Shown here: positions 3,697 to 63,199 of the stretch, one piece after another
Position numbering within the stretch: position 1 is the stretch's first letter
Layout of the letters: the number at the start of each line of letters is the position of its first letter
IMG/VR virus record: IMGVR_UViG_3300027996_002186
Location: 248,001-312,000 of that record
DNA length: 64,000 nucleotides
Direction: 5' to 3' (one strand)
Translations under genes and position numbers: made by a program
Notes under the pieces: model-generated
Databases searched by the model: none
The model's input: the letters and a program-made list of their open reading frames with translations, nothing else
What the model was told of the DNA's origin: nothing

Positions 3697-3827
3697 AACA
3701 AATGATTTTACTAAAGTCGAGACAAGTGGGTAAATCCTATATGAATTCAATGAATATGATGAAACATTTCATGGAATATAAAAAATTCTCAAGGTGTCAA
3801 AGTATAAAGAAAATATTTAATATATAA
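3693..3827 (+). CDS. 44 aa small protein with RxxS tag (missed by ORF track)
   Basis: ATGA overlap; MKQMILLKSRQVGKSYMNSMNMMKHFMEYKKFSRCQSIKKIFNI. Confidence 0.6.
   Translation: MKQMILLKSRQVGKSYMNSMNMMKHFMEYKKFSRCQSIKKIFNI
3819..3826 (+). promoter_or_regulatory. Putative phage late promoter AATATATA
   Basis: 20 nt before HD gene ATG. Confidence 0.45.
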
Positions 3828-5538: not shown

Positions 5539-6648
5539 TTATTTCTTGAACTCTTTTTTATCACTAGAGATATGGAAGTTCTCAAATTGAAAATACTTAT
5601 CATAAACTTCTTTAACCTTTTTCATGTTAACGTCATCTAAAATGTCATAAACAGACCATCCATCTGGGCTAATCCATTGTCCAACATTCTTATATCTAAG
5701 AATTTCATCTTTTTGTTTTCTAACTAAGTAATATTCTTTACATATGTTAAGTCTTTCTTTCGTTAGATACTTATCTGGTTTAGTTAAAACTTCTTTAGTA
5801 GCTTCAACAACAGCTTTATAGTTCTTATTTGATGTTAGTGTTGCGATAGTAGATATACCTTGTTTATTAACTCTAGATAAGTAACAATGTACGTAATAAA
5901 CTAATCCTTTTTTCTCTCTTATCTCTTGATAAAGAGGTGACATAAGACCCATAGATAACATAGCATTTATAAAATGCACATATCCAAAATCTTCTTCGAT
6001 CACAGGAGATAACATTATCAATGATGTTTTATCTTTAAATTCATTACCTAACTCAAGGTCAGTCTCGAAGTCACCATAAACTAATGGTTTAACTATTTCT
6101 CTTTCGGCGAAATCAATTGTATTATTTTTATATTCTTTACCCTTAGAAACGTTTATTATCTTAGTTGGTCTAGCATATTGTAATTCATAATAATTAAGAC
6201 AATCCATAAATTTCATTTTCTCTAAATCTGATTTTAATCCAATTGGATCATAATCATTAAATAATTTACGAGAAAGATTTAAGCTATGTGTTTGTGTTTG
6301 ATCATTAAAACAATCCATATATTCTTCTAAAACAATATTTCTTTCATTTTTAAATTGTTCTTTAGTAACGTTAAATTGACCAAGTAATTTTACAAATTCA
6401 TGTTTCCATTTATTTACCTTTTCTTCTAAACCTTGTATATAAAATACAATTTCGTTTCCAGAAGTATAAGCATTCCAATCAATACCATCTTTATCGAAAT
6501 CTTCTTGTAGGTGGTCGAAATTCTTACACATCAAGTGTTCCATTAAATGTGATATTCCGTACCATCCTGGCTTCTCTAAATTAGTTGATCCGTCATATAC
6601 GACATAGAATCCAGATAGATCTGTTTGTGATTTTAAATTTATTATCAT
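5539..6648 (-). CDS. M16 (insulinase-like) zinc peptidase
   Basis: GISHLMEH (HxxEH), WNAYT, ERNIVLEE, LYQEIREKKGLVY. Confidence 0.9.
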   Translation of the reverse strand: MIINLKSQTDLSGFYVVYDGSTNLEKPGWYGISHLMEHLMCKNFDHLQEDFDKDGIDWNAYTSGNEIVFYIQGLEEKVNKWKHEFVKLLGQFNVTKEQFKNERNIVLEEYMDCFNDQTQTHSLNLSRKLFNDYDPIGLKSDLEKMKFMDCLNYYELQYARPTKIINVSKGKEYKNNTIDFAEREIVKPLVYGDFETDLELGNEFKDKTSLIMLSPVIEEDFGYVHFINAMLSMGLMSPLYQEIREKKGLVYYVHCYLSRVNKQGISTIATLTSNKNYKAVVEATKEVLTKPDKYLTKERLNICKEYYLVRKQKDEILRYKNVGQWISPDGWSVYDILDDVNMKKVKEVYDKYFQFENFHISSDKKEFKK

Positions 6649-6716: not shown

Positions 6717-7667
6717 TTAATAATGATGGTCGAAATTCTTTTCGAAATCTCCGTATAGTATTAATTCGTTTCCGGTTGACTCAATATCTTTACCAAACCC
6801 ATATAATAAATTTGATAATTCACTTCCAAATTCCTCATTTGTGATTTTATTACCACCATTTAATTCACTTAGTAATTCGTTTAAATCCTCAACGGCCTCT
6901 CTTATGAAGAAAATAATTCTATCTTCTTCCAATATATGATATTTATCGAAATCTCTAACATTACTATTTCTCACTATATTACTAATATCCGTATAGTTTT
7001 GATTTTCATACTTACTCCTAATTACACTATTTATAACGTCATCTAACCAATCTTCTTTCATCATAGAAACCAAAAACTTAGTAACTTTTAATACAAATTC
7101 ATCAACACTACTGTTTGCTTGTTTTAGCATCAAGTGACCATATTGTGTATGGTGGTATCCATATTTATATCTTATTGGTAATTCCTCATCCATGTATAAA
7201 GAATCAACCCATCCGTTACCACCTAATCTAACTTTGTTTTTATCAAGTCCTAATTTATCAACAGTTCTGTATAAATAATAATCAATGTATCCATTTGTCA
7301 CATCCATTGGTGATTTATGTATAACACCAAATATATCATCACCACAAAGTTTATCAACCTCTTTAGAAAATAGATTTTTTATACTTTCAAAATCCCAACC
7401 CTTTCTATCGAGTAATTTTTGCATATTATTGTAATCTAAATCTAAATCTGATTGGGTAAGGTTGTGTTTTTTACACAAATCAGAAAAATTTGTTCTATAA
7501 AATTCACTTAAAAGTAAAACATCATCTGTAAACTCATCTCTTAAAACAGTCATCTTATCTCTAGTGAATCTATGTTCCATAATAAAATCACTTACCTTTT
7601 GTGGTACTTTAGACTTTCTATAATAAGATTCTTTTATAAAGTCACTATATTTCCGATTAATCGCCAT
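6717..7667 (-). CDS. Putative internal head protein (capsid-targeting-like N-terminus)
   Basis: MAINRKYSDFIKES; AATATATA 4 nt upstream (7672-7679). Confidence 0.6.
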   Translation of the reverse strand: MAINRKYSDFIKESYYRKSKVPQKVSDFIMEHRFTRDKMTVLRDEFTDDVLLLSEFYRTNFSDLCKKHNLTQSDLDLDYNNMQKLLDRKGWDFESIKNLFSKEVDKLCGDDIFGVIHKSPMDVTNGYIDYYLYRTVDKLGLDKNKVRLGGNGWVDSLYMDEELPIRYKYGYHHTQYGHLMLKQANSSVDEFVLKVTKFLVSMMKEDWLDDVINSVIRSKYENQNYTDISNIVRNSNVRDFDKYHILEEDRIIFFIREAVEDLNELLSELNGGNKITNEEFGSELSNLLYGFGKDIESTGNELILYGDFEKNFDHHY

Positions 7668-7681
7668 AATGTATATATTAA

Positions 7682-8659
7682 TTAGTATTTTCTATTTTTT
7701 AGATGATTTATAAAATCAAATGAATTATCGATGGTATCTCCTATTAAATCTTTAGTAACATTTATTTTATCAACATTATCCCAACCATCTTCCATTTGAA
7801 AGAAATGATCCGAAGCATCTAATTTTGATTTACTAATGTATATTTCACAATCAATAAAGCTTTTCATAAAAAAATCTTTTAATATGGCTGATGTTCTTAA
7901 ACCAACTTCATCACTATCAGAGAATATGTTTATCTTAGATGGCTTCTTTTTGAGTACTTTGTATAATTGAACCCCGCTCCACATAGCACTTGAACACGAT
8001 ACACACTTCTCCCCATTTGTTTGTATAGCCATCATATCAAATACTCCTTCTGTTAACCATACCTCATCTCCTTCATTTATATTATCTAATCCCCAAACTG
8101 GGATATCTGGACAAGCTAATGAATACTTTAGTGATTTCTTATCTGTGTTCTCTATAGCTATTTTTCTGATAGCACAATTTACTAAAACTCCATTTTCAAA
8201 TAGTGGTATAATTATACCACCATTTTTTATACCATCAACTAATATTTTTTTAAGAGTTGGGTGGCAAGTAGCTCCTATTGTTTCTAGATTTTTATAATCT
8301 TTTATGTTTGATAGTCCTAATAAGTCATACTTTTCAATGATAACATCACAACCTCTTCCAATTAGATAATTATATTCATTTTCACTAAATTTACCTTTAT
8401 TCTTTATGAATAGATTTGTTAATGATTCTAAATCTTCTTTATTCACTATAACATCATCACACTCAGTATCAATTTCACTAAGATTAACTTCAACCATCCT
8501 TGAATCAGAAACATATAAAGATTTTGATTTATTAAATTTTCTTTCTATGTTTATAATTTTAAATGGATTAATATCATCTGATAAAAAATTATTAACAACT
8601 CCTTTAACAGAACGATTGTTATATAATATAAACCCAAGTTCTTCTTTGGTATAATTCAT
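7682..8659 (-). CDS. TOPRIM-domain (primase-like) protein
   Basis: WLTEGVFDMMA and FSDSDEVG acidic motifs; no CHC2 zinc finger seen. Confidence 0.7.
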   Translation of the reverse strand: MNYTKEELGFILYNNRSVKGVVNNFLSDDINPFKIINIERKFNKSKSLYVSDSRMVEVNLSEIDTECDDVIVNKEDLESLTNLFIKNKGKFSENEYNYLIGRGCDVIIEKYDLLGLSNIKDYKNLETIGATCHPTLKKILVDGIKNGGIIIPLFENGVLVNCAIRKIAIENTDKKSLKYSLACPDIPVWGLDNINEGDEVWLTEGVFDMMAIQTNGEKCVSCSSAMWSGVQLYKVLKKKPSKINIFSDSDEVGLRTSAILKDFFMKSFIDCEIYISKSKLDASDHFFQMEDGWDNVDKINVTKDLIGDTIDNSFDFINHLKNRKY

Positions 8660-11995: not shown

Positions 11996-12071
11996 AATTT
12001 TCTATTTTTTTTAATATAAGTTATATATTAATATAGAAATATACCTTTTTGTGATAAATAAAATTAAGCAT

Positions 12072-12117: not shown

Positions 12118-13221
12118 TTAATCTAGTGTCAAGAAGATTTTTCTACTTTGACGGTCAACAGAAAGTACTTTCACATTAACATTATCACCTTTAGAGAAAG
12201 ATTTATTTAACTTAGACATTTCTGATGTGTGTATAAGACCAACAGTCTCTTCGTCTAAATTAACAAGTGTACCAAATTGTTTAACATCTTTGATTTTACC
12301 TTTGATAACTTGTCCATTTTTAATAGTGTCCCATAGTGTTTCTCTCAAAATTTGAGTTAAGATAATTTTAGGGAACTTAGCGTTCTTTATTATCTCTTTA
12401 ACATAGAATTCAATTTGGAAACCAGCACTTATTTCTGATATTCTATTTTCCCACTCTGGATTAATATTAGCCTTGTGTATCATACCAGTTAAGCATTCAT
12501 TAAACTCAACAAATACTCCAAACGGGGCGGTTCCGGTCACTGTTCCTGTGTAAGATTCATCAAATGTTAATTCTTTAACAACTGATGGTATTAAACTATG
12601 AAGATATTTTCTTCTACTTACAATGTAAGTTCCTTCTCTCTCAGCATAAGATTCAATCATTACATCGAAAGTTTCACCAATAATTGATGTTGGGTCGTGT
12701 AATTTATTGATACCAGCTAGTGTGTTCGGCATAAATGCTGGTAGAACAACTCCACCGTGTAATAACTCAATATCATACCCAGCTGGATTTAATGCTTTTA
12801 CATAAGCTTGTACAGATTCGTTATCTTTTAATGATTTAAGTGTAACGTGTGCCATACTTTCATACAATGCTGATACACTACCTTTGATGAAAAATTCATC
12901 GTGATTAATACTTATCACAATAATATCGATTGTAGTTCCTACTTCTATATCTCTAAGATATTTAGATTCACCTGGTTTAACATCAACTCTAACATCATCC
13001 TTAAAACCATCTACTGAGAAAACATATTGTTCAGATGAAATACCTTGGTATTCACCATTTACAACTTCACCAGGTTTTGGCATTTTCATAATAGTTGCTT
13101 CATAAAGATCTGATAATCTTTTATATTCTTCTGAATTCATTTTATCTTCGAGTGAATCATTACTATATAATAAATCGAAGTCGGGATTACCCATTTCATT
13201 TTTTGTTTTAATCATATTCAT
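12118..13221 (-). CDS. rpsA: Ribosomal protein S1-like, multiple S1 domains
   Basis: Repeated S1 motifs: YTGTVTGTAPFGVFVEF...GMIHKA, GKIKDVKQFGTLV...GLIHTSE, VKVLSVD; about 4 domains, shorter than full bacterial S1. Confidence 0.85.
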   Translation of the reverse strand: MNMIKTKNEMGNPDFDLLYSNDSLEDKMNSEEYKRLSDLYEATIMKMPKPGEVVNGEYQGISSEQYVFSVDGFKDDVRVDVKPGESKYLRDIEVGTTIDIIVISINHDEFFIKGSVSALYESMAHVTLKSLKDNESVQAYVKALNPAGYDIELLHGGVVLPAFMPNTLAGINKLHDPTSIIGETFDVMIESYAEREGTYIVSRRKYLHSLIPSVVKELTFDESYTGTVTGTAPFGVFVEFNECLTGMIHKANINPEWENRISEISAGFQIEFYVKEIIKNAKFPKIILTQILRETLWDTIKNGQVIKGKIKDVKQFGTLVNLDEETVGLIHTSEMSKLNKSFSKGDNVNVKVLSVDRQSRKIFLTLD

Positions 13222-21616: not shown

Positions 21617-21719
21617 TTGTCTATCTTTGATTTTGTTTATATATTAATTTTTATCTATTTCTTTGACTATTTAATTTTAATTTTATATATTTGTAGTTAT
21701 AAAACTATTCGAGCTTAGT

Positions 21720-21769: not shown

Positions 21770-21777
21770 TATATTTG
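21770..21777 (+). promoter_or_regulatory. TAnnTTTG promoter element
   Basis: TATATTTG 4 nt before ligase ATG; second copy at 21686-21693. Confidence 0.55.
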
Positions 21778-21781
21778 TAAT

Positions 21782-23638
21782 ATGATAGAACAATTAAAAG
21801 AAAATATAATTAAGGCCAATGCGTCTTATAGAAAAGGTAATCCTATTATGTCTGATTCTGAGTATGATACATTACTTGAAGAATTAGCTTTACTATCACC
21901 AGATGATGATTTACTATCTTTAGTAGGTCATGTCGTTGTTGATGAATCTCGTAAGAGAAGACTTCCCATTGATATGGCATCAATGAATAAAATTAAATCT
22001 ATGGATGATGTCAATGATTGGTGTCGTCTTAAAGGTATTTCAAAATCCGAAATAGTTATCATAACTCCTAAATTTGATGGTCTTTCTCTTTGTGTGAATG
22101 AATTGGATAATTCTTCATCCACAAGAGGTGATGGAACTTTTGGACAACAATCAGACGAACATTATAAATTGATTGGTAATCATTTAGATGTACATGAAGA
22201 TGTTAATACTTTACCATTTACATATACTTATGGTGAGGTGATGATGGCTAAGAAAAAATTTGAAGATGATTATTCAAAAGACTTCGCTAACCCAAGAAAT
22301 CTTGTTGCTGGTTTACTAAATTCAAAAAGTATTAGTGAATCACTAAAAGATTGTGATTACATTAAGTATGGTGCTATTTGTAGAACTAAATTTAGCACAA
22401 AAAAAGAAATAATTGACGAACTAAATAATGGTCAACGAGTAAAAGTTAATTACCATATCTGTATGATTTCAGAATTAACAGAAGATTTACTTATTGACCT
22501 TTTCCATAAATTATCACCTGATTATGAAATTGATGGTTTAATCATTGAGATTAACGATATATCAATACAAAATAGATTGGGTAGAGAAACTTCCTCAAAC
22601 AATCCAGTTTGGGCAAGAGCATTCAAACATCCAAGTTTCGAGCAAACTGCTGAGTCAGAAGTTATCGGGATATCTTGGAATATTTCAAAACAAGGTTTAT
22701 TAAAACCTATTCTACACATTACTCCTATTAAACTTGATGGTGTTACAGTATCTAATGTTACTGGAAACAACGCTCGTTTTGTAAAAGATATGGGTATCGG
22801 AGTTGGTGCTAAAGTATTAGTGAAACGTAGTGGTATGGTTATACCATTAATCGTTGATGTTTTAGAAACTGTTGATTTCATACAACCTACAATCGAAGGT
22901 GTTGATATTGGTTGGAATGAAGCTGGTATTGAATTAATAACATTAACAGAAACAGACGACCAAAAATTAAAAAAGAATGTTGCATTCTTTGAAATCCTAG
23001 AAGCTGATAATGTATCAGAGGGTGTTATTACCCAACTTTGGGAAGCTGGTCATACAACAATAAAAGACATTCTAAACCTCACAAAAGTTGATTTAGAGAA
23101 GATTGACCGGTTCGGGAAAAGAAAGTCAAGTATAGTGTTCAACTCTATTCAAAAGTCTGTTAAAGACGTTCAATTGAGTAAACTACAACACGCTACAGGT
23201 ATCTTTAGAGGCTTGGGAAGTAAGAAATTAGTATTACTAGAACAATTCACTGAAAAGCCTAGTATTGATAACGTAATGGTGATTGATGGATTCGCTGAGA
23301 AGTCAGCAAAATCTTACATTGATTCTTATGATGAATTCTTTGAGTTCATAAAAGACTTACCCGTTACTATCGAAGAAAAGGTCGAAGTGGCTCCCGTTGG
23401 TGATGATTTAATTGGTAAACAATTTGTCTTCACAGGAGTTCGTAGAAAAGACTTGAATGAAGTGATTGAATCAAGAGGTGGTAAGATTGGTAGTGGTGTA
23501 TCTAAAAACACATCATACTTAGTTGTAAAGGCTACTGGAAGTGGATCATCAAAAGAAAATAAAGCTATCAAGTTAAAAGATTCTGGACAAGATATTGAGG
23601 TTATAACAGTTGAACAATTAGAAGTGATATTAGGATAA
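21782..23638 (+). CDS. ligA: NAD-dependent DNA ligase
   Basis: MSDSEYD, PKFDG, TRGDG, ANPRN, YEIDG, ARAFK, OB domain, HhH, BRCT (FVFTG...GSGVSKNTSYLV). Confidence 0.95.
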   Translation: MIEQLKENIIKANASYRKGNPIMSDSEYDTLLEELALLSPDDDLLSLVGHVVVDESRKRRLPIDMASMNKIKSMDDVNDWCRLKGISKSEIVIITPKFDGLSLCVNELDNSSSTRGDGTFGQQSDEHYKLIGNHLDVHEDVNTLPFTYTYGEVMMAKKKFEDDYSKDFANPRNLVAGLLNSKSISESLKDCDYIKYGAICRTKFSTKKEIIDELNNGQRVKVNYHICMISELTEDLLIDLFHKLSPDYEIDGLIIEINDISIQNRLGRETSSNNPVWARAFKHPSFEQTAESEVIGISWNISKQGLLKPILHITPIKLDGVTVSNVTGNNARFVKDMGIGVGAKVLVKRSGMVIPLIVDVLETVDFIQPTIEGVDIGWNEAGIELITLTETDDQKLKKNVAFFEILEADNVSEGVITQLWEAGHTTIKDILNLTKVDLEKIDRFGKRKSSIVFNSIQKSVKDVQLSKLQHATGIFRGLGSKKLVLLEQFTEKPSIDNVMVIDGFAEKSAKSYIDSYDEFFEFIKDLPVTIEEKVEVAPVGDDLIGKQFVFTGVRRKDLNEVIESRGGKIGSGVSKNTSYLVVKATGSGSSKENKAIKLKDSGQDIEVITVEQLEVILG

Positions 23639-24787: not shown

Positions 24788-24824
24788 TATATTTGTTAAT
24801 AAAGGAAACAACTTTTAATATATA
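24788..24824 (+). promoter_or_regulatory. Tandem TAnnTTTG and AATATATA elements before sigma gene
   Basis: TATATTTG 24788-24795; AATATATA 24817-24824. Confidence 0.5.
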
Positions 24825-24912
24825 ATGGGTATAAGTAAGTACAATTAACGGCAATAAAAAGATTGACAAGACTAAAAAAGTTGAAGTCAAATTAAAAACA
24901 AAAAGCATAAAT

Positions 24913-25521
24913 ATGAAATTAGATGCAATAACTACATTCTCTGATCAAGAGAAATTATTCAGAGAAAGAACAGGTAAAGATTTTACCGAACTCTACCAAA
25001 AGTACTATCCAAAACTTATTTATTTCACAGGAAGAATTTGTAATGACCCTCAGAAAGCAGAGGATTTATCAACAGATGCTTTCATGACAGCACTTGAAAA
25101 AATCGAAAAGTATGACAGAGAGAAATCACAATTCTCGACATGGCTTTTCACAATCGCAAAAAATCTAACATTACAAAACATTAAGGTCTCTAAGAAGTCA
25201 GTATCATTAGATGTTGAATTTGATAACGAGGGTACAACTATGAAAGATTTCATAGAAGAAGACGACACATCAAACCAAACTGTTGTTAATAATGTCTTTG
25301 ATAAAAAGGCTACTATAATGAAAAGTAGAATCAAGCAATTAAAGGAACCGTATCGAACGGTAATTGAAATGAGAGAAATTAACAGGATGGCATATAAGGA
25401 TATAGCAGACCAACTTGGTAAAAACCTATCAACTATTAAATCACAAATTAGAAATGGCCGCCATATTCTTATTGAACAAACTCAAAATGAGTTTGATGAA
25501 ATAGATGAAATGTACCTTTAA
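24913..25521 (+). CDS. ECF-type sigma-70 factor
   Basis: Region 2 AEDLSTDAF, FSTWLFTIAKN; region 4 LKEPYRTVIEM...YKDIADQLGKNLSTIKSQIRNGR. Confidence 0.9.
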   Translation: MKLDAITTFSDQEKLFRERTGKDFTELYQKYYPKLIYFTGRICNDPQKAEDLSTDAFMTALEKIEKYDREKSQFSTWLFTIAKNLTLQNIKVSKKSVSLDVEFDNEGTTMKDFIEEDDTSNQTVVNNVFDKKATIMKSRIKQLKEPYRTVIEMREINRMAYKDIADQLGKNLSTIKSQIRNGRHILIEQTQNEFDEIDEMYL

Positions 25522-30394: not shown

Positions 30395-30439
30395 GTTATT
30401 ATATATTAAATTTTATTTTATAAATCTAAACTTTATTAC

Positions 30440-40310: not shown

Positions 40311-40366
40311 TATAAAATATTATTTTATTACTCTATATATTATTTCTGAATATTCTTTTTATTTAT

Positions 40367-42209: not shown

Positions 42210-42241
42210 ATCTTATATATTAATTTCTAAAACCCACTCTG

Positions 42242-42973
42242 TTATTTAATTAGAATACTAAATTCTGATTTTATATCATCAACTTTACCACTTAGTAACT
42301 TCTCAATATAATCCAAATCTCCTTCTTTGTACCAATCTCCAATCCATTTGCCTGTTATCCTTGAAAAATAATTAGAATTGGCTCTACCACGAATTGAAAT
42401 ATAATCAATAGTATATTTACTATCATTAAGATATGATATTAAACTAACTATGTTACTTACTAATTCTTCATCAGTAATATTAGATTCAAATTTTGATGAG
42501 TAGTTACCTTTTATATTTATTGAATAGGTGTATTTATCTGATCCCTTTACCATTTTTAGAAATTTTGGAAATAAATCTACATAATGATACCAATCTCTAT
42601 CTCGACCAAATGACTTTGTTAATACATGAACGGTGTTGGCTTCTATACCAACTGATACTTTATAACTATTATCGGTTAAATCAAGTAAAAAATCTTTTAT
42701 ATTACCAAGAAGTTCATCATCAACATCAATAACATCTTTAGAATATGTGATATACTTATATACTGTATTTATATCTTCATCTGATAGATTACCCATTTCA
42801 TCTTCTACCCAATAAGGATTTTCTATATCATAACCACCTCTTGTTAATATAGCATATACCCGACCAGTATCCGGATCCAAAACATGACCAATTGATTGAA
42901 GTTCGATAAAATTATCTGGTATAGGTTCACTTTTCCATTCAAATACTTTACTATATTTTTTCAAATACTTCAT
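42242..42973 (-). CDS. Putative internal head protein
   Basis: Start moved to MKYLKKYSKVFE (track extension overlaps the tRNA); AATATATA at 42979-42986. Confidence 0.7.
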   Translation of the reverse strand: MKYLKKYSKVFEWKSEPIPDNFIELQSIGHVLDPDTGRVYAILTRGGYDIENPYWVEDEMGNLSDEDINTVYKYITYSKDVIDVDDELLGNIKDFLLDLTDNSYKVSVGIEANTVHVLTKSFGRDRDWYHYVDLFPKFLKMVKGSDKYTYSINIKGNYSSKFESNITDEELVSNIVSLISYLNDSKYTIDYISIRGRANSNYFSRITGKWIGDWYKEGDLDYIEKLLSGKVDDIKSEFSILIK

Positions 42974-43054
42974 AACAATATATATTAAGTTACTAACTTT
43001 GAAAATAAATTCCAAAAGGATACCAACCTTTTTAATATATAAACGTATATATAT

Positions 43055-43126
<72 letters not shown>

Positions 43127-43283: not shown

Positions 43284-43940
43284 TCATCTTTTTGATATCT
43301 TGGTGTGTATATTTTCTTCTTCCTTTGATAACATTTCCTCAAGATATAAATAAATGTATTTTCTATACCTTTTAAGTATATTCTCATCACAAACTCTATT
43401 AATAGTACCCCATAGTTGTTTCCACTGTAATTGCTCAAATCCCTTTGTATCTAATCTATGAATAGCTTCTTTAACTGTTTGACTTTTCTTTGAAAGGTCA
43501 TTTGCTATTGTCCAAGAGAAAGCCATTATTTCTTCTTTATCAGAGAAATACTTATTTTGTTCAATAGGGTTTGGTAATTCAAATTTTATTCCTCTTCTTC
43601 TTTTAGTTTGCTCTTTGTGAATTAATTCATGGCCAATTATATCATTAACTATTTCTTTGAAATTTGGAAATCTTTTAATGATCTTATCATCAGATATTAC
43701 AAACATTGGTTTTTTTCTCTCAGGGTGGAAGAGTGCAAAAAATGGGGCAAATTTTGGTGGAGCTGTTTTCTTATCAAGTTCATTTAATGAATCATAAAAT
43801 TCATCATACCCAACTACATCAAAATCATTTTGATTTCCATATTCAACTAAATCATCAAATGAATTGATAAATAAATCGCTTTCTATTTTTTGTGGAATAA
43901 TAACTGCTTCGAATGTCTTGTATGTTTTAAGATATTTCAT
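43284..43940 (-). CDS. Putative internal head protein with HExxH zinc motif
   Basis: MKYLKTYKTFEA; GHELIHKEQ...EIMAFS; AATATATA at 43945-43952. Confidence 0.7.
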   Translation of the reverse strand: MKYLKTYKTFEAVIIPQKIESDLFINSFDDLVEYGNQNDFDVVGYDEFYDSLNELDKKTAPPKFAPFFALFHPERKKPMFVISDDKIIKRFPNFKEIVNDIIGHELIHKEQTKRRRGIKFELPNPIEQNKYFSDKEEIMAFSWTIANDLSKKSQTVKEAIHRLDTKGFEQLQWKQLWGTINRVCDENILKRYRKYIYLYLEEMLSKEEENIHTKISKR

Positions 43941-43990
43941 AATGTATATATTCATATCATGAAACATGAAATCAATAGAATAATAAAAAC

Positions 43991-44681: not shown

Positions 44682-44731
44682 CTATTTTATATATTTTTCT
44701 TCTTATTATAGACATAAAATAATCTAAGTTT

Positions 44732-45389: not shown

Positions 45390-45436
45390 AATTTATTTGT
45401 TATTTGTTATTATATATTAAAAGGTAAATACGTTTT

Positions 45437-47882: not shown

Positions 47883-47911
47883 ACCACCAATTTTTTATTG
47901 GTGGTTTTTTT
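47883..47911 (+). terminator. Intrinsic terminator
   Basis: ACCACCAAT...ATTGGTGGTTTTTTT. Confidence 0.75.
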
Positions 47912-47924
47912 ATATATAGTCTTA

Positions 47925-49179: not shown

Positions 49180-49285
49180 ATACTATATATTGAATTATAT
49201 AATTCAATTTTAACTTTTATAGTAAAAATTCTATCTATGAGGAAGTATATACTTGTATATATAAGTTAAATTAAAAATACTTATT

Positions 49286-49453
49286 ATGCCAGCTAAAGAT
49301 AAAATGTTTTCACTTAGAATTCCAGAAAAATTATTAGAAGATTATAGACAGTTCTGTGATGAGAACTCCATAAACATATCTAAAAGATTAAGAAAGTTTA
49401 TGGAAAGAGACTTAGATAGTTGGAGAGAAAGGAAAAAGAATTCCAATAATTAA
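49286..49453 (+). CDS. Ribbon-helix-helix (CopG/Arc-like) DNA-binding protein, 55 aa (missed by ORF track)
   Basis: MPAKDKMFSLRIPEKLLEDYRQFCDENSINISKRLRKFMERDL. Confidence 0.8.
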   Translation: MPAKDKMFSLRIPEKLLEDYRQFCDENSINISKRLRKFMERDLDSWRERKKNSNN

Positions 49454-49462
49454 TATATAGTT

Positions 49463-54969: not shown

Positions 54970-55040
54970 ATCCTTATATATTAAAAATATATTTTCGTTA
55001 ATTAATTTAGATATAATTTGGTAGAATGAATATAAATACC

Positions 55041-56258: not shown

Positions 56259-56273
56259 AAATATATATAAAAT

Positions 56274-56307
56274 AAAAAAGAGTCGAGGTTTAATTCGACT
56301 CTTTTTT
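56274..56307. terminator. Bidirectional intrinsic terminator
   Basis: AAAAAAGAGTCGA...TCGACTCTTTTTT. Confidence 0.85.
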
Positions 56308-56328
56308 ATTTTATATATTATTTGTTTT

Positions 56329-56877: not shown

Positions 56878-56966
56878 AATTATTAATATTTTTTCTTATT
56901 GTATATATTATATATTAAACACCGCTTTTTGTAATTTTTTACATACCAGTATTTAATATATAATGT

Positions 56967-58202: not shown

Positions 58203-58247
58203 GACTTATATATAATTTTTGATAATAAAATATTATAAATTTTTTAC

Positions 58248-58255: not shown

Positions 58256-58275
58256 TAATTAAATATATATAAAAT

Positions 58276-62162: not shown

Positions 62163-62228
62163 AATTCTATATATTAACTTTGTTGATTCAAAATATTTGC
62201 TTATCTTTATAAATAACAAAATATAAAT

Positions 62229-63175: not shown

Positions 63176-63199
63176 TATATTTTTTTTTATATATACCTT

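What the first reader, a model, noticed from the sequence alone, without database searches (positions are those of the whole stretch)
7668..7679. AATATATA late motif often only 3-6 nt from the start codon: near-leaderless late mRNAs
Seen: spacing to ATG of 4 (7667), 5 (30394), 4 (42209), 5 (42973), 4 (43940), 6 (44681), 4 (49179), 3 (49463), 5 (54969), 4 (56967) and 5 (62162) nt. It is 20-34 nt before other genes and 13 nt before the tRNA. It differs from T4 TATAAATA. The word is common by chance in this AT-rich DNA (rough estimate: tens of copies), so the evidence is positional. Inference: if it is a -10-like element, transcription starts at or near the AUG, giving leaderless mRNAs for head cargo; the phage tRNA-fMet and S1 may serve them.
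Basis: partly seen in the sequence, partly recalled or inferred. Interest (0 to 1): 0.6.

Follow-up and report, generated by a model that had tools for sequence, protein, structure and literature searches.

The report
Promoter box abutting start codons: leaderless phage mRNAs
In this giant phage, which probably infects Bacteroidetes, and in its closest relatives, a conserved 10-base promoter box (TTAATATATA) sits 4-6 bases before the start codon of about one gene in seven, so these genes are most likely transcribed as mRNAs that begin at the AUG; no RNA data could be obtained to prove it.

Summary
All 11 listed sites check out.

- **Spacing.** In the 312.7-kb contig, 85 of 156 AATATATA copies lie 60 nt or less upstream of a called first ATG. 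Spacings are bimodal: 3-6 nt (39 copies, 20 at exactly 4) and 16-37 nt (44 copies). None fall at 10-15 nt.
- **Replication.** Two 634-642-kb relatives (LR745206, LR756502) give the same histogram. The class is kept gene by gene between orthologues.
- **Promoter features.** The motif is strand-specific and heads transcription units. It precedes a tRNA, has no -35 partner, and occupies the position of the host Bacteroidetes -7 box (-12 to -5).
- **Start point.** In the long-leader class the 5th base after the motif is A in 82% of sites. That is where the A of ATG sits at spacing 4.
- **Tight pairs.** Some divergent start codons are only 12-20 nt apart, with one palindromic copy between them.

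My reading is a phage-specific, -10-only promoter. About half of its transcription units would be leaderless.

What is not shown:
- "Late" is only partly supported, because NrdA, topoisomerase II and RNA ligase carry the motif too.
- S1 is unlikely to serve leaderless mRNAs.

The parts
7672..7681 (-). TTAATATATA box, 4 nt before ATG 7667 (316-aa protein starting MAINRKYSDFIKES). It fills most of the 14-nt gap after the stop of the upstream co-directional gene.
30400..30409 (-). box 5 nt before ATG 30394 (575 aa); kept at 6 nt in the LR745206 orthologue
42214..42223 (-). box 4 nt before ATG 42209 (122 aa)
42979..42988 (-). box 5 nt before ATG 42973 (243 aa). It is palindromic with a + strand copy at 42977-42984.
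43945..43952 (-). AATATATA 4 nt before ATG 43940 (MKYLKTYKTF...). The longest frame runs from 43967, so a first-ATG gene call misses this start.
44688..44697 (-). box 6 nt before ATG 44681 (218 aa)
47909..47918 (+). variant TTTATATATA, 6 nt before ATG 47925 (234 aa)
49184..49193 (-). box 4 nt before ATG 49179 (185 aa)
49450..49459 (+). box 3 nt before ATG 49463 (6 nt before the second ATG of ATGATG; 360 aa)
54975..54984 (-). box 5 nt before ATG 54969 (746 aa); 4 and 6 nt in the two orthologues
56953..56962 (+). box 4 nt before ATG 56967 (125 aa)
58207..58216 (-). variant ATTATATATA, 4 nt before ATG 58202 (121 aa)
58262..58271 (+). AATATATATA 4 nt before ATG 58276 (152 aa), with a host-type TATATTTG box just upstream. 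The LR756502 orthologue has only the host-type box.
62168..62177 (-). box 5 nt before ATG 62162 (649 aa)
63186..63195 (+). variant TTTATATATA, 4 nt before ATG 63200 (168 aa)
43032..43041 (+). box 13 nt before the tRNA gene. This shows the motif is a transcription signal, not a translation signal.
43055..43126 (+). initiator-type tRNA-Met (CAU): C1xU72 mismatch, three G-C pairs in the anticodon stem
21638..21647 (-). long-leader example: box 21 nt before ATG 21616 (1055 aa; heads an operon that includes the S1-domain gene). Spacing is 21 and 22 nt in the orthologues.
40334..40343 (-). long-leader example: box 23 nt before ATG 40310 (1178 aa)
3817..3826 (+). long-leader example: box 20 nt before ATG 3847 (186 aa); 24 nt in both relatives
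45411..45420 (-). long-leader example: box 21 nt before ATG 45389 (201 aa)
12022..12031 (-). long-leader example: box 26 nt before ATG 11995 (256 aa)
21770..21777 (+). host-type Bacteroidetes -7 box TATATTTG, 4 nt before ATG 21782 of the NAD-dependent DNA ligase. Same geometry with a host-type promoter.
24913..25521 (+). ECF-type sigma factor (sigma-1), the best candidate reader of the box. It is conserved in all genomes that carry the signature.
12118..13221 (-). protein with two S1 domains (367 aa)

Best explanation
T-T-A-A-T-A-T-A-T-A is the -10-type element of a phage-specific promoter with no -35 partner. If +1 is the 5th base after the box, the box lies at about -14 to -5. It is probably read by host RNA polymerase core carrying a phage factor. 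The conserved ECF-type sigma at window 24913-25521 is the best candidate for that factor.

Transcription would start about 5 nt downstream of the last A. In roughly half of the transcription units the ATG is placed exactly there, at spacing 4, or 1-2 nt further on. The mRNA then begins with AUG or has a 1-2 nt leader. Such an mRNA must be translated by the leaderless route: 5'-terminal AUG, initiator tRNA, and no ribosome-binding leader.

In the other half the same promoter is followed by an A-rich leader of about 12-25 nt without a Shine-Dalgarno sequence. This is the usual Bacteroidetes mode. Leaders of about 6-11 nt are avoided, as expected if only these two initiation modes work.

Shown: the motif, its position, its strand bias, its conservation and its place at the head of units. 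Inferred: the exact start point, the factor that reads the box, and the mode of translation.
For: 1. Spacing is bimodal with an empty zone at 10-15 nt in three genomes. Close spacing is 4-5 times more frequent than random placement within the same intergenic gaps.
2. ATATATA is the most enriched upstream 7-mer: 114 of 385 genes, P about 1e-75. AATATATA is the commonest 8-mer ending 4-6 nt before ATGs.
3. The class is kept between orthologues while flanks diverge. Contig against LR745206 (72% aa identity): close to close 33 of 38, long to long 31 of 42, none to none 151 of 159. Switches between close and long are rare.
4. The 54 close-spaced genes fall in 54 separate BLAST families, so detectable whole-protein paralogy does not inflate the count. 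A short shared N-terminal peptide would escape this test.
5. Genes with the motif head transcription units. 46-58% are divergent from the upstream gene, against 13-15% of other genes. The median upstream gap is 40-86 nt against 5-12 nt. Terminator-like hairpins lie upstream of 9-13% against 1-2%.
6. Some divergent start codons are only 12-20 nt apart, with one palindromic AATATATATT between them, in all three genomes. There is no room for leaders.
7. The box also sits 13 nt before a tRNA gene.
8. In the long-leader class the 5th nt after the box is A in 36/44, 70/85 and 62/75 sites. The 4th nt is A in 51% of sites and the 6th in 69%. That is the position of the A of ATG at the modal spacing.
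9. Host-type TAnnTTTG boxes show the same 4-5 nt spacing to ATG. In Flavobacterium johnsoniae this box lies at -12 to -5, with 4-5 nt to the mapped start (PMC6847099).
10. Frames opening 4-6 nt after the box start almost only with ATG: 41 against 2 GTG and 0 TTG. A Met at codons 4-10 is not enriched. Shine-Dalgarno words are depleted upstream.
11. No RNA polymerase beta, beta-prime or T7-type domain was found. Two sigma-70-family genes are present.
Against:
- The candidate sigmas are ECF-type, and such sigmas normally need a -35 element. None is visible; there is only a faint purine at about -25 and A at about -30.
- Host-type boxes in the leadered arrangement do not show an A at the 5th nt, so that internal calibration did not reproduce.
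- About half of the close-spaced genes follow a co-directional gene. They could also be translated from read-through transcripts, as could the gene of the finding itself, which has only a 14-nt gap.
- Gene starts are my own first-ATG calls.
- Very divergent phage RNA polymerases could escape Pfam and PHROGs. Several proteins of 1100-1900 aa have no match.
Confidence: 0.65

Rival explanations
1. The box is a promoter, but it is read by an unrecognised phage-encoded RNA polymerase rather than host core plus a phage sigma. The model would be the AT-rich early promoters of AR9 and phiKZ-like jumbo phages. The mRNAs would still be leaderless or nearly so.
For: AR9 early promoters read AAATATATATTAT-(6N)-G+1, contain the same 8-mer, and start a fixed 6 nt downstream (PMC5312081). 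There is no -35 element, which is odd for ECF sigmas. Many giant proteins have no family match.
Against: Pfam finds no beta, beta-prime or single-subunit polymerase domains. PHROGs gives no hit for most of the large proteins scanned. Host-type sigma-A boxes occur in the same genomes with the same geometry, which argues that host polymerase is used. A sigma gene is conserved wherever the signature occurs.
Confidence: 0.12
2. The box is a regulatory or operator site, or a weak internal promoter. The close-spaced genes would be expressed mainly from starts further upstream, so most of their mRNA would have a leader that contains the box.
For: About half of the close-spaced genes follow a co-directional gene, sometimes with a gap of only 12-20 nt. 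There are no TSS data.
Against: The other half are divergent from their neighbour. Gaps can be as short as 12-20 nt and hold nothing but the box. No other conserved element lies upstream. Terminator-like hairpins abut the box in 9-13% of cases. The same box precedes a tRNA.
Confidence: 0.12
3. The box acts on the RNA as a translation signal: an AU-rich, non-Shine-Dalgarno ribosome or S1 binding site of the kind seen in Bacteroidetes (GeneMarkS-2 'group B').
For: Bacteroidetes use A-rich motifs a few nt upstream of starts (PMC6028130). The phage encodes an S1-domain protein.
Against: Group-B motifs occur before operon-internal genes as well. This box is nearly confined to first genes of units. 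The same box also sits 16-37 nt upstream, too far for a ribosome site, and before a tRNA. It is an exact 8-10-mer rather than a loose A-rich patch. Its spacing equals that of the host -7 promoter box.
Confidence: 0.08
4. It is a chance or compositional effect of AT-rich intergenic DNA, or an artefact of wrong start codons.
For: The word count in the window is only marginally above shuffles (39 against 25 +/- 5).
Against: Permutation within intergenic gaps, strand asymmetry, the reversed-pattern control, orthologue conservation and no excess of downstream in-frame Met.
Confidence: 0.01

Closest known systems
Leaderless genes predicted from a -10 box about 10 nt before the start codon (GeneMarkS-2 'group C', e.g. 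Mycobacterium, Deinococcus; PMC6028130, PMC3160421)
   Same: A promoter box lies at a fixed short distance from the ATG of first genes in operons. A second, leadered class coexists with it. Roughly 25-50% of units are leaderless.
   Different: This is a phage of a phylum (FCB/Bacteroidetes) whose genomes are 'group B', with few leaderless mRNAs: 3.7% of Bacteroides thetaiotaomicron UTRs are under 10 nt and 5.5% of mRNAs in F. psychrophilum are leaderless. The box is not TANNNT but a long exact AATATATA.
T4 late promoter TATAAATA (-13 to -6), read by gp55 with gp33 and the sliding clamp (PMC1524935)
   Same: An 8-bp AT-only -10-type box with no -35 element, phage-specific, with the start 5-6 nt downstream.
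   Different: The sequence differs. TATAAATA itself shows no positional signal here: 4 of 148 copies. No gp55 homologue was found. T4 late mRNAs have leaders with Shine-Dalgarno sites. Here the box also precedes nucleotide-metabolism genes.
Bacteroidetes sigma-A promoter, -7 box TAnnTTTG at -12 to -5 (PMC6847099, PMC9723704)
   Same: Same position relative to the inferred start. A at -11 and T at -8 and -6 are shared. The phage also uses true TAnnTTTG boxes with identical spacing to ATG.
   Different: A instead of T at -12 and -7, and A instead of G at -5, which are near-invariant host positions. A different specificity factor is therefore expected.
AR9 / phiKZ-type early promoters read by virion RNA polymerase (AAATATATATTAT-N6-G+1; PMC5312081)
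   Same: A long AT-rich exact consensus that contains AATATATA, with a fixed start a few nt downstream.
   Different: AR9 UTRs are 26-491 nt long. Those promoters need a multisubunit phage polymerase, which is not detectable here.

Membership tests
Bacterial leaderless mRNA | Primary 5' end at the A of the AUG (or a UTR of a few nt at most) | not testable with these tools
Bacterial leaderless mRNA | -10-type promoter element ending about 5-8 nt before the start codon of a first-in-unit gene | tested here: met
   Spacing mode is 4 nt. Genes with the motif head units.
Bacterial leaderless mRNA | AUG (not GUG or UUG) start and no Shine-Dalgarno sequence | tested here: met
   ATG 41 against GTG 2 and TTG 0. 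A 4-6 nt spacer cannot hold a Shine-Dalgarno site, and such words are depleted genome-wide.
T4-type late promoter | Consensus TATAAATA at -13 to -6 | tested here: not met
   The box is AATATATA. TATAAATA lies 3-6 nt from an ATG in only 4 of 148 copies.
T4-type late promoter | No -35 element | tested here: met
   Pooled logos of 176 and 199 sites show under 0.25 bit at every position upstream of -16.
T4-type late promoter | gp55-family sigma encoded by the phage | tested here: not met
   No match to T4 gp55, phrog_234 or phrog_12791. The contig may be incomplete.
T4-type late promoter | Restricted to late (virion) genes | tested here: not met
   NrdA, topoisomerase II, RNA ligase and an HNH nuclease also carry the box.
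Bacteroidetes sigma-A promoter | TAHHTTTG with invariant T-12, A-11, T-8, T-7, T-6, G-5 | tested here: not met
   The box has A at -12, -7 and -5.
ECF-sigma promoter | Two-block promoter with a conserved -35 (often AAC) and a -10 (often CGT). These consensus words are from general knowledge, not from a tool. | tested here: not met
phiKZ/AR9 virion-polymerase promoter | Phage-encoded multisubunit RNA polymerase | tested here: inconclusive
   Pfam Rpb2_6 and Rpb1_2 give no hit, but such polymerases are very divergent.

The most novel reading that the evidence does not exclude
A sub-clade of the largest known phages (about 480-640 kb, Mahaphage clade, Bacteroidetes hosts) has moved a large share of its genes to leaderless expression: 15-19% of all genes and about half of transcription units, from both host-type and phage-type promoters. 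The host phylum hardly uses this mode. The phage supplies its own initiator tRNA from the same promoter, which would favour leaderless initiation and so give phage messages priority. A regulon of proteins with T4-like capsid-targeting N-termini is wired this way. Single palindromic boxes in 15-20-nt gaps would act as minimal bidirectional leaderless promoters.
Probability: 0.22. Interest if true: 0.8.

Novelty: new variant of a known kind. Interest (0 to 1): 0.6.

Why it matters
Nothing is known about how the huge, uncultured Bacteroidetes phages organise gene expression.

This finding gives:
- a precise, conserved promoter word;
- a predicted start point;
- a genome-wide map of transcription units;
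- a testable claim that about one gene in six is made from leaderless mRNA, in a host phylum where such mRNAs are 4-5% of the total and translation initiation is already unusual.

It also improves start-codon calls. For example, 43940, 42973 and 62162 are mis-started by longest-frame rules.

It links three features that have been discussed separately for huge phages: a phage sigma factor, an initiator tRNA and a family of putative head-cargo proteins.

The paper library I searched holds no description of this motif or of leaderless expression in these phages.

Tried and rejected
- **Paralogy.** Rejected as the source of the signal: 54 close-spaced genes fall in 54 BLAST families.
- **Wrong start codons.** Rejected: a Met at codons 4-10 occurs in 2-8% of close-spaced genes, no more than elsewhere.
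- **A -35 element.** Looked for and not found.
- **T4 gp55.** Searched by protein and by two PHROG profiles, with no match.
- **RNA polymerase.** Multisubunit and T7-type domains gave nothing. The T7-type control rang nowhere, so that blank is uninformative.
- **Internal calibration of +1.** Leadered host-type boxes show no A preference at the 5th nt.
- **Second sigma.** The one at contig 20.0-20.6 kb has no counterpart in LR745206 or LR756502, so I set it aside as the reader of a motif conserved in all three.
- **Function of large motif-bearing proteins.** Pfam and PHROGs left most of them unnamed. I could not locate the capsid, portal, sheath or terminase genes for a clean test of 'late'.

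Full report
**What the window is.** The window is the reverse strand of bases 180099-244098 of a single 312,709-bp IMG/VR virus contig with 29% G+C. Its nearest records in the phage collection are the uncultured huge phages LR745206 (634,780 bp, 77% nucleotide identity over a 7-kb probe) and LR756502 (642,428 bp). Al-Shayeb et al. 2020 place all of their genomes above 634 kb in the 'Mahaphage' clade and predict Bacteroidetes hosts. They also note that huge phages with S1-like genes rarely show Shine-Dalgarno sites. They say nothing on promoters or leaderless mRNAs (PMC7162821). A 483-kb IMG/VR contig is identical to this contig over the 20 kb compared, so the contig is probably a fragment.

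**Checking the observation.** So are the 20-34 nt class and the 13 nt to the tRNA. The word count alone is unremarkable: 39 copies in the window against 25 +/- 5 in shuffles. The position is not.

I called genes on the whole contig with a self-trained codon model, always taking the first ATG: 385 genes, 91% coding. Of 156 copies on both strands, 85 lie within 60 nt upstream of such an ATG. The spacings are bimodal: 3:1, 4:20, 5:11, 6:7, then almost nothing, with none at 10-15. After that comes a broad mode at 16-37 nt with 44 copies.

- Placing each intergenic copy at random inside its own intergenic gap predicts 8.0 +/- 2.5 copies at 3-6 nt. 37 are seen, and 5000 trials never exceeded 19.
- The reverse complement gives 5 of 156. 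The median 8-mer of the same composition gives 2.
- ATATATA is the most enriched 7-mer in the 60 nt upstream of genes: 114 of 385 genes against 10 expected.
- AATATATA is by far the commonest 8-mer ending 4-6 nt before an ATG.

**Replication in relatives.** I fetched LR745206 and LR756502 whole and treated them the same way. The histogram repeats: LR745206 gives 4:49, 5:25, 6:7 plus a second mode at 16-29. LR756502 gives 4:54, 5:29, 6:17, 7:10 plus the same second mode.

TTAATATATANNNNATG occurs 34 and 31 times in these two, against 1 and 0 for the reversed control. The shorter TAATATATANNNNATG occurs 31 times against 1 for the control in a 476-kb IMG/VR relative, and 20 against 0 in LR756504. 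It is at background level in LR756501 (735 kb), LR756500 and Sphingomonas phage PAU. The signature therefore belongs to a sub-clade.

Using the ATATATA core, the counts per genome are:

| Genome | Close-spaced genes | Long-leader genes | All genes |
|---|---|---|---|
| this contig | 54 | 60 | 385 |
| LR745206 | 114 | 118 | 882 |
| LR756502 | 143 | 101 | 905 |

**Is it inherited noise?** The 54 close-spaced genes fall in 54 different BLAST families, although a short shared N-terminal peptide would escape that test. I compared reciprocal best hits whose alignments begin at both N-termini. The class is kept gene by gene:
- Against LR745206 (72% aa identity): close to close 33 of 38, long to long 31 of 42, none to none 151 of 159.
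- Against LR756502 (56% aa identity): close to close 13 of 23, long to long 21 of 35.
- Changes between the two classes are rare.

Aligned upstream regions show that in the more distant relative only the box, the spacing and the ATG survive.

**Why a promoter.**
- The box is strand-specific.
- It sits 13 nt before a tRNA gene.
- Genes that carry it head transcription units. 46-58% are divergent from the gene upstream, against 13-15% of other genes. Median upstream gaps are 40-86 nt against 5-12 nt. Hairpin-plus-T-run terminators lie within 80 nt upstream in 9-13% of close-spaced genes, against 1-2% of genes without the box.
- No second conserved block exists upstream. Apart from T at the two positions before the 8-mer (70% and 81%), every position back to -57 carries under 0.25 bit.

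**Why the start is probably at the ATG.**
1. In Bacteroidetes the housekeeping -7 box TAnnTTTG lies at -12 to -5, with 4 or 5 nt to the mapped start (PMC6847099; also PMC9723704). These phages carry true TAnnTTTG boxes, and those show the same peak at 4-5 nt before ATGs. There are 6, 42 and 26 such genes in the three genomes. One is in the window: TATATTTG at 21770-21777, ATG at 21782, the NAD-dependent DNA ligase. AATATATA therefore occupies the slot of a promoter element whose distance to +1 has been measured.
2. In the long-leader class the 5th nt after the box is A in 36/44, 70/85 and 62/75 sites (82% overall). The 4th nt is A in 51% and the 6th in 69%. This is the position of the A of ATG at the modal spacing.
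3. Divergent start codons are sometimes only 12-20 nt apart. A single palindromic AATATATATT serves both sides, for example at contig 82142-82158, and in three and two such gaps in the relatives.
4. Frames that open 4-6 nt after the box begin with ATG 41 times, GTG twice and TTG never. A Met at codons 4-10 is no commoner than elsewhere. These ATGs are therefore the real starts, and they meet the AUG requirement of leaderless translation.
5. Shine-Dalgarno words are depleted upstream of all genes: 1.6-3.0% against 3.7-7.8% in an internal control. Long leaders are A-rich, as in the host phylum.
6. The empty zone at 10-15 nt fits two distinct initiation modes.

The same logic underlies published in-silico calls of leaderless genes (PMC6028130). 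What is unusual is the setting. Bacteroidetes genomes are 'group B'. Only 3.7% of B. thetaiotaomicron UTRs are under 10 nt, and 5.5% of F. psychrophilum mRNAs are leaderless. Here the predicted share is 15.6-18.7% of all genes, counting both promoter types. Among motif-driven units it is 47-59%.

**Who reads the box.** Pfam finds no RNA polymerase beta or beta-prime domain and no T7-type polymerase. T4 gp55 has no detectable homologue. Two sigma-70-family genes are present, both ECF-type.

The one in the window (24913-25521) has orthologues at 84%, 67%, 71% and 47% identity in the four other genomes that carry the signature. It has a more distant 37% homologue in LR756501, which lacks the signature. 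The second sigma has no counterpart in the two whole relatives.

Sigma-1 is therefore my candidate, but an ECF sigma working without a -35 element would be unusual. AR9's virion polymerase recognises AAATATATATTAT-N6-G+1, which contains the same word. An unrecognised phage polymerase therefore stays a live rival. It would not change the leaderless conclusion.

**'Late', 'head cargo', tRNA and S1.**
- Motif-bearing genes include a tail-fibre protein and the unit that holds a baseplate-wedge gene. They also include NrdA, both topoisomerase II subunits, an RNA ligase, a Clp/Lon-like ATPase and an HNH nuclease. N-terminal sequences read by eye also suggest NrdB, DnaJ and adenylate kinase, without a family search.
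- Host-type boxes precede the DNA ligase, Glu-tRNA synthetase and an HNH nuclease. A split between host-type (early) and phage-type (everything later) promoters fits better than 'late only'. Timing is untested.
- The close-spaced class is strongly enriched for N-termini such as MLKKYKEFIKES and MAINRKYSDFIKES. [YF]xx[FY] occurs at residues 5-8 in 35-45% of these genes, against 8-9% of genes without the box.
- T4 internal proteins IPIII and IPII begin MKTYQEFIAE. I know this from memory as their capsid-targeting, protease-cleaved peptide. The spacing histogram is the same with and without this peptide.
- The tRNA is initiator-like, with a C1xU72 mismatch and three G-C pairs in the anticodon stem.
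- An S1-domain protein is encoded at 12118-13221. From established E. coli work, which I recall and did not test here, S1 is dispensable for leaderless mRNAs. It more likely serves the A-rich leadered class.

**Limits.** No RNA data could be obtained. Gene starts are my own calls. Most large motif-driven proteins have no family match, so I could not place the capsid, portal or terminase genes. The host is inferred from promoter type, the lack of Shine-Dalgarno sites and the literature on the relatives.

**Verdict.** The promoter reading is well supported. The leaderless reading is the most economical one but awaits 5'-end mapping. 'Late' and the role of S1 are not supported as stated.

Noticed in passing
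window 21770-21784; also 6, 42 and 26 genes in the contig, LR745206 and LR756502: Host-type Bacteroidetes -7 boxes (TAnnTTTG, mostly ccgTATATTTGta) also sit 4-5 nt before ATGs, for example before the NAD-dependent DNA ligase. Leaderless geometry is therefore not confined to the phage-specific motif.
   Followed up: partly
window 6717-7667 (-), 43284-43940 (-), 42242-42973 (-) and many genes elsewhere in the contig: Many proteins begin with a peptide like MK.L.KY.EF or M.KKY.EFI.ES, close to T4 IPIII/IPII MKTYQEFIAE. This is 35-45% of close-spaced genes, 13-18% of long-leader genes and 8-9% of the rest. It is possibly a capsid-targeting or propeptide signal. The prohead protease was not sought.
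   Followed up: partly
contig 82142-82158, 273103-273114; LR745206 93251-93265, 528181-528197, 362259-362278; LR756502 79801-79817, 383489-383505: Divergent start codons lie only 12-20 nt apart, separated by one palindromic AATATATATT. If the box is a promoter, these are bidirectional leaderless promoters of minimal size.
   Followed up: partly
window 24788-24912: The sigma-1 gene has a long leader of about 90 nt. A host-type TATATTTG lies at 24788-24795 and the phage box at 24817-24824. The element TTAACGGCAAT (24845-24855) is conserved in the leaders of all three genomes. This suggests early priming, then self-amplification, plus a regulatory site.
   Followed up: no
L089 (IMGVR_UViG_3300027996_002186, 483,262 bp): A 483-kb IMG/VR contig is identical to this contig over the 20 kb fetched. 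The 312.7-kb contig, rated 91% complete by CheckV, is therefore probably a fragment of a larger genome.
   Followed up: no
window 56260-56319: Two copies of the motif on opposite strands flank a strong bidirectional terminator hairpin between convergent genes. Their role there is unclear.
   Followed up: no
window 5539-6648 (-) and 7682-8659 (-): The gene after the finding's gene carries Peptidase_M16 domains (insulinase-like). The gene before it has a weak Toprim_2 hit. The exact 316-aa protein is on record in 89 blocks of public assemblies, so the phage is widespread.
   Followed up: no
contig 178.7 kb (-) and other sites: Terminator hairpin, T-run, box and ATG are packed into about 45 nt (for example ccagat...atctgg-T7-ATATATA-aaaa-ATG). 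The T-run of the terminator doubles as the T-rich flank of the box.
   Followed up: partly
window 43940, 42973, 62162: Longest-frame rules extend these genes upstream (to ATG 43967, TTG 43096 and TTG 62219). The box-plus-ATG signature marks the likelier starts.
   Followed up: partly
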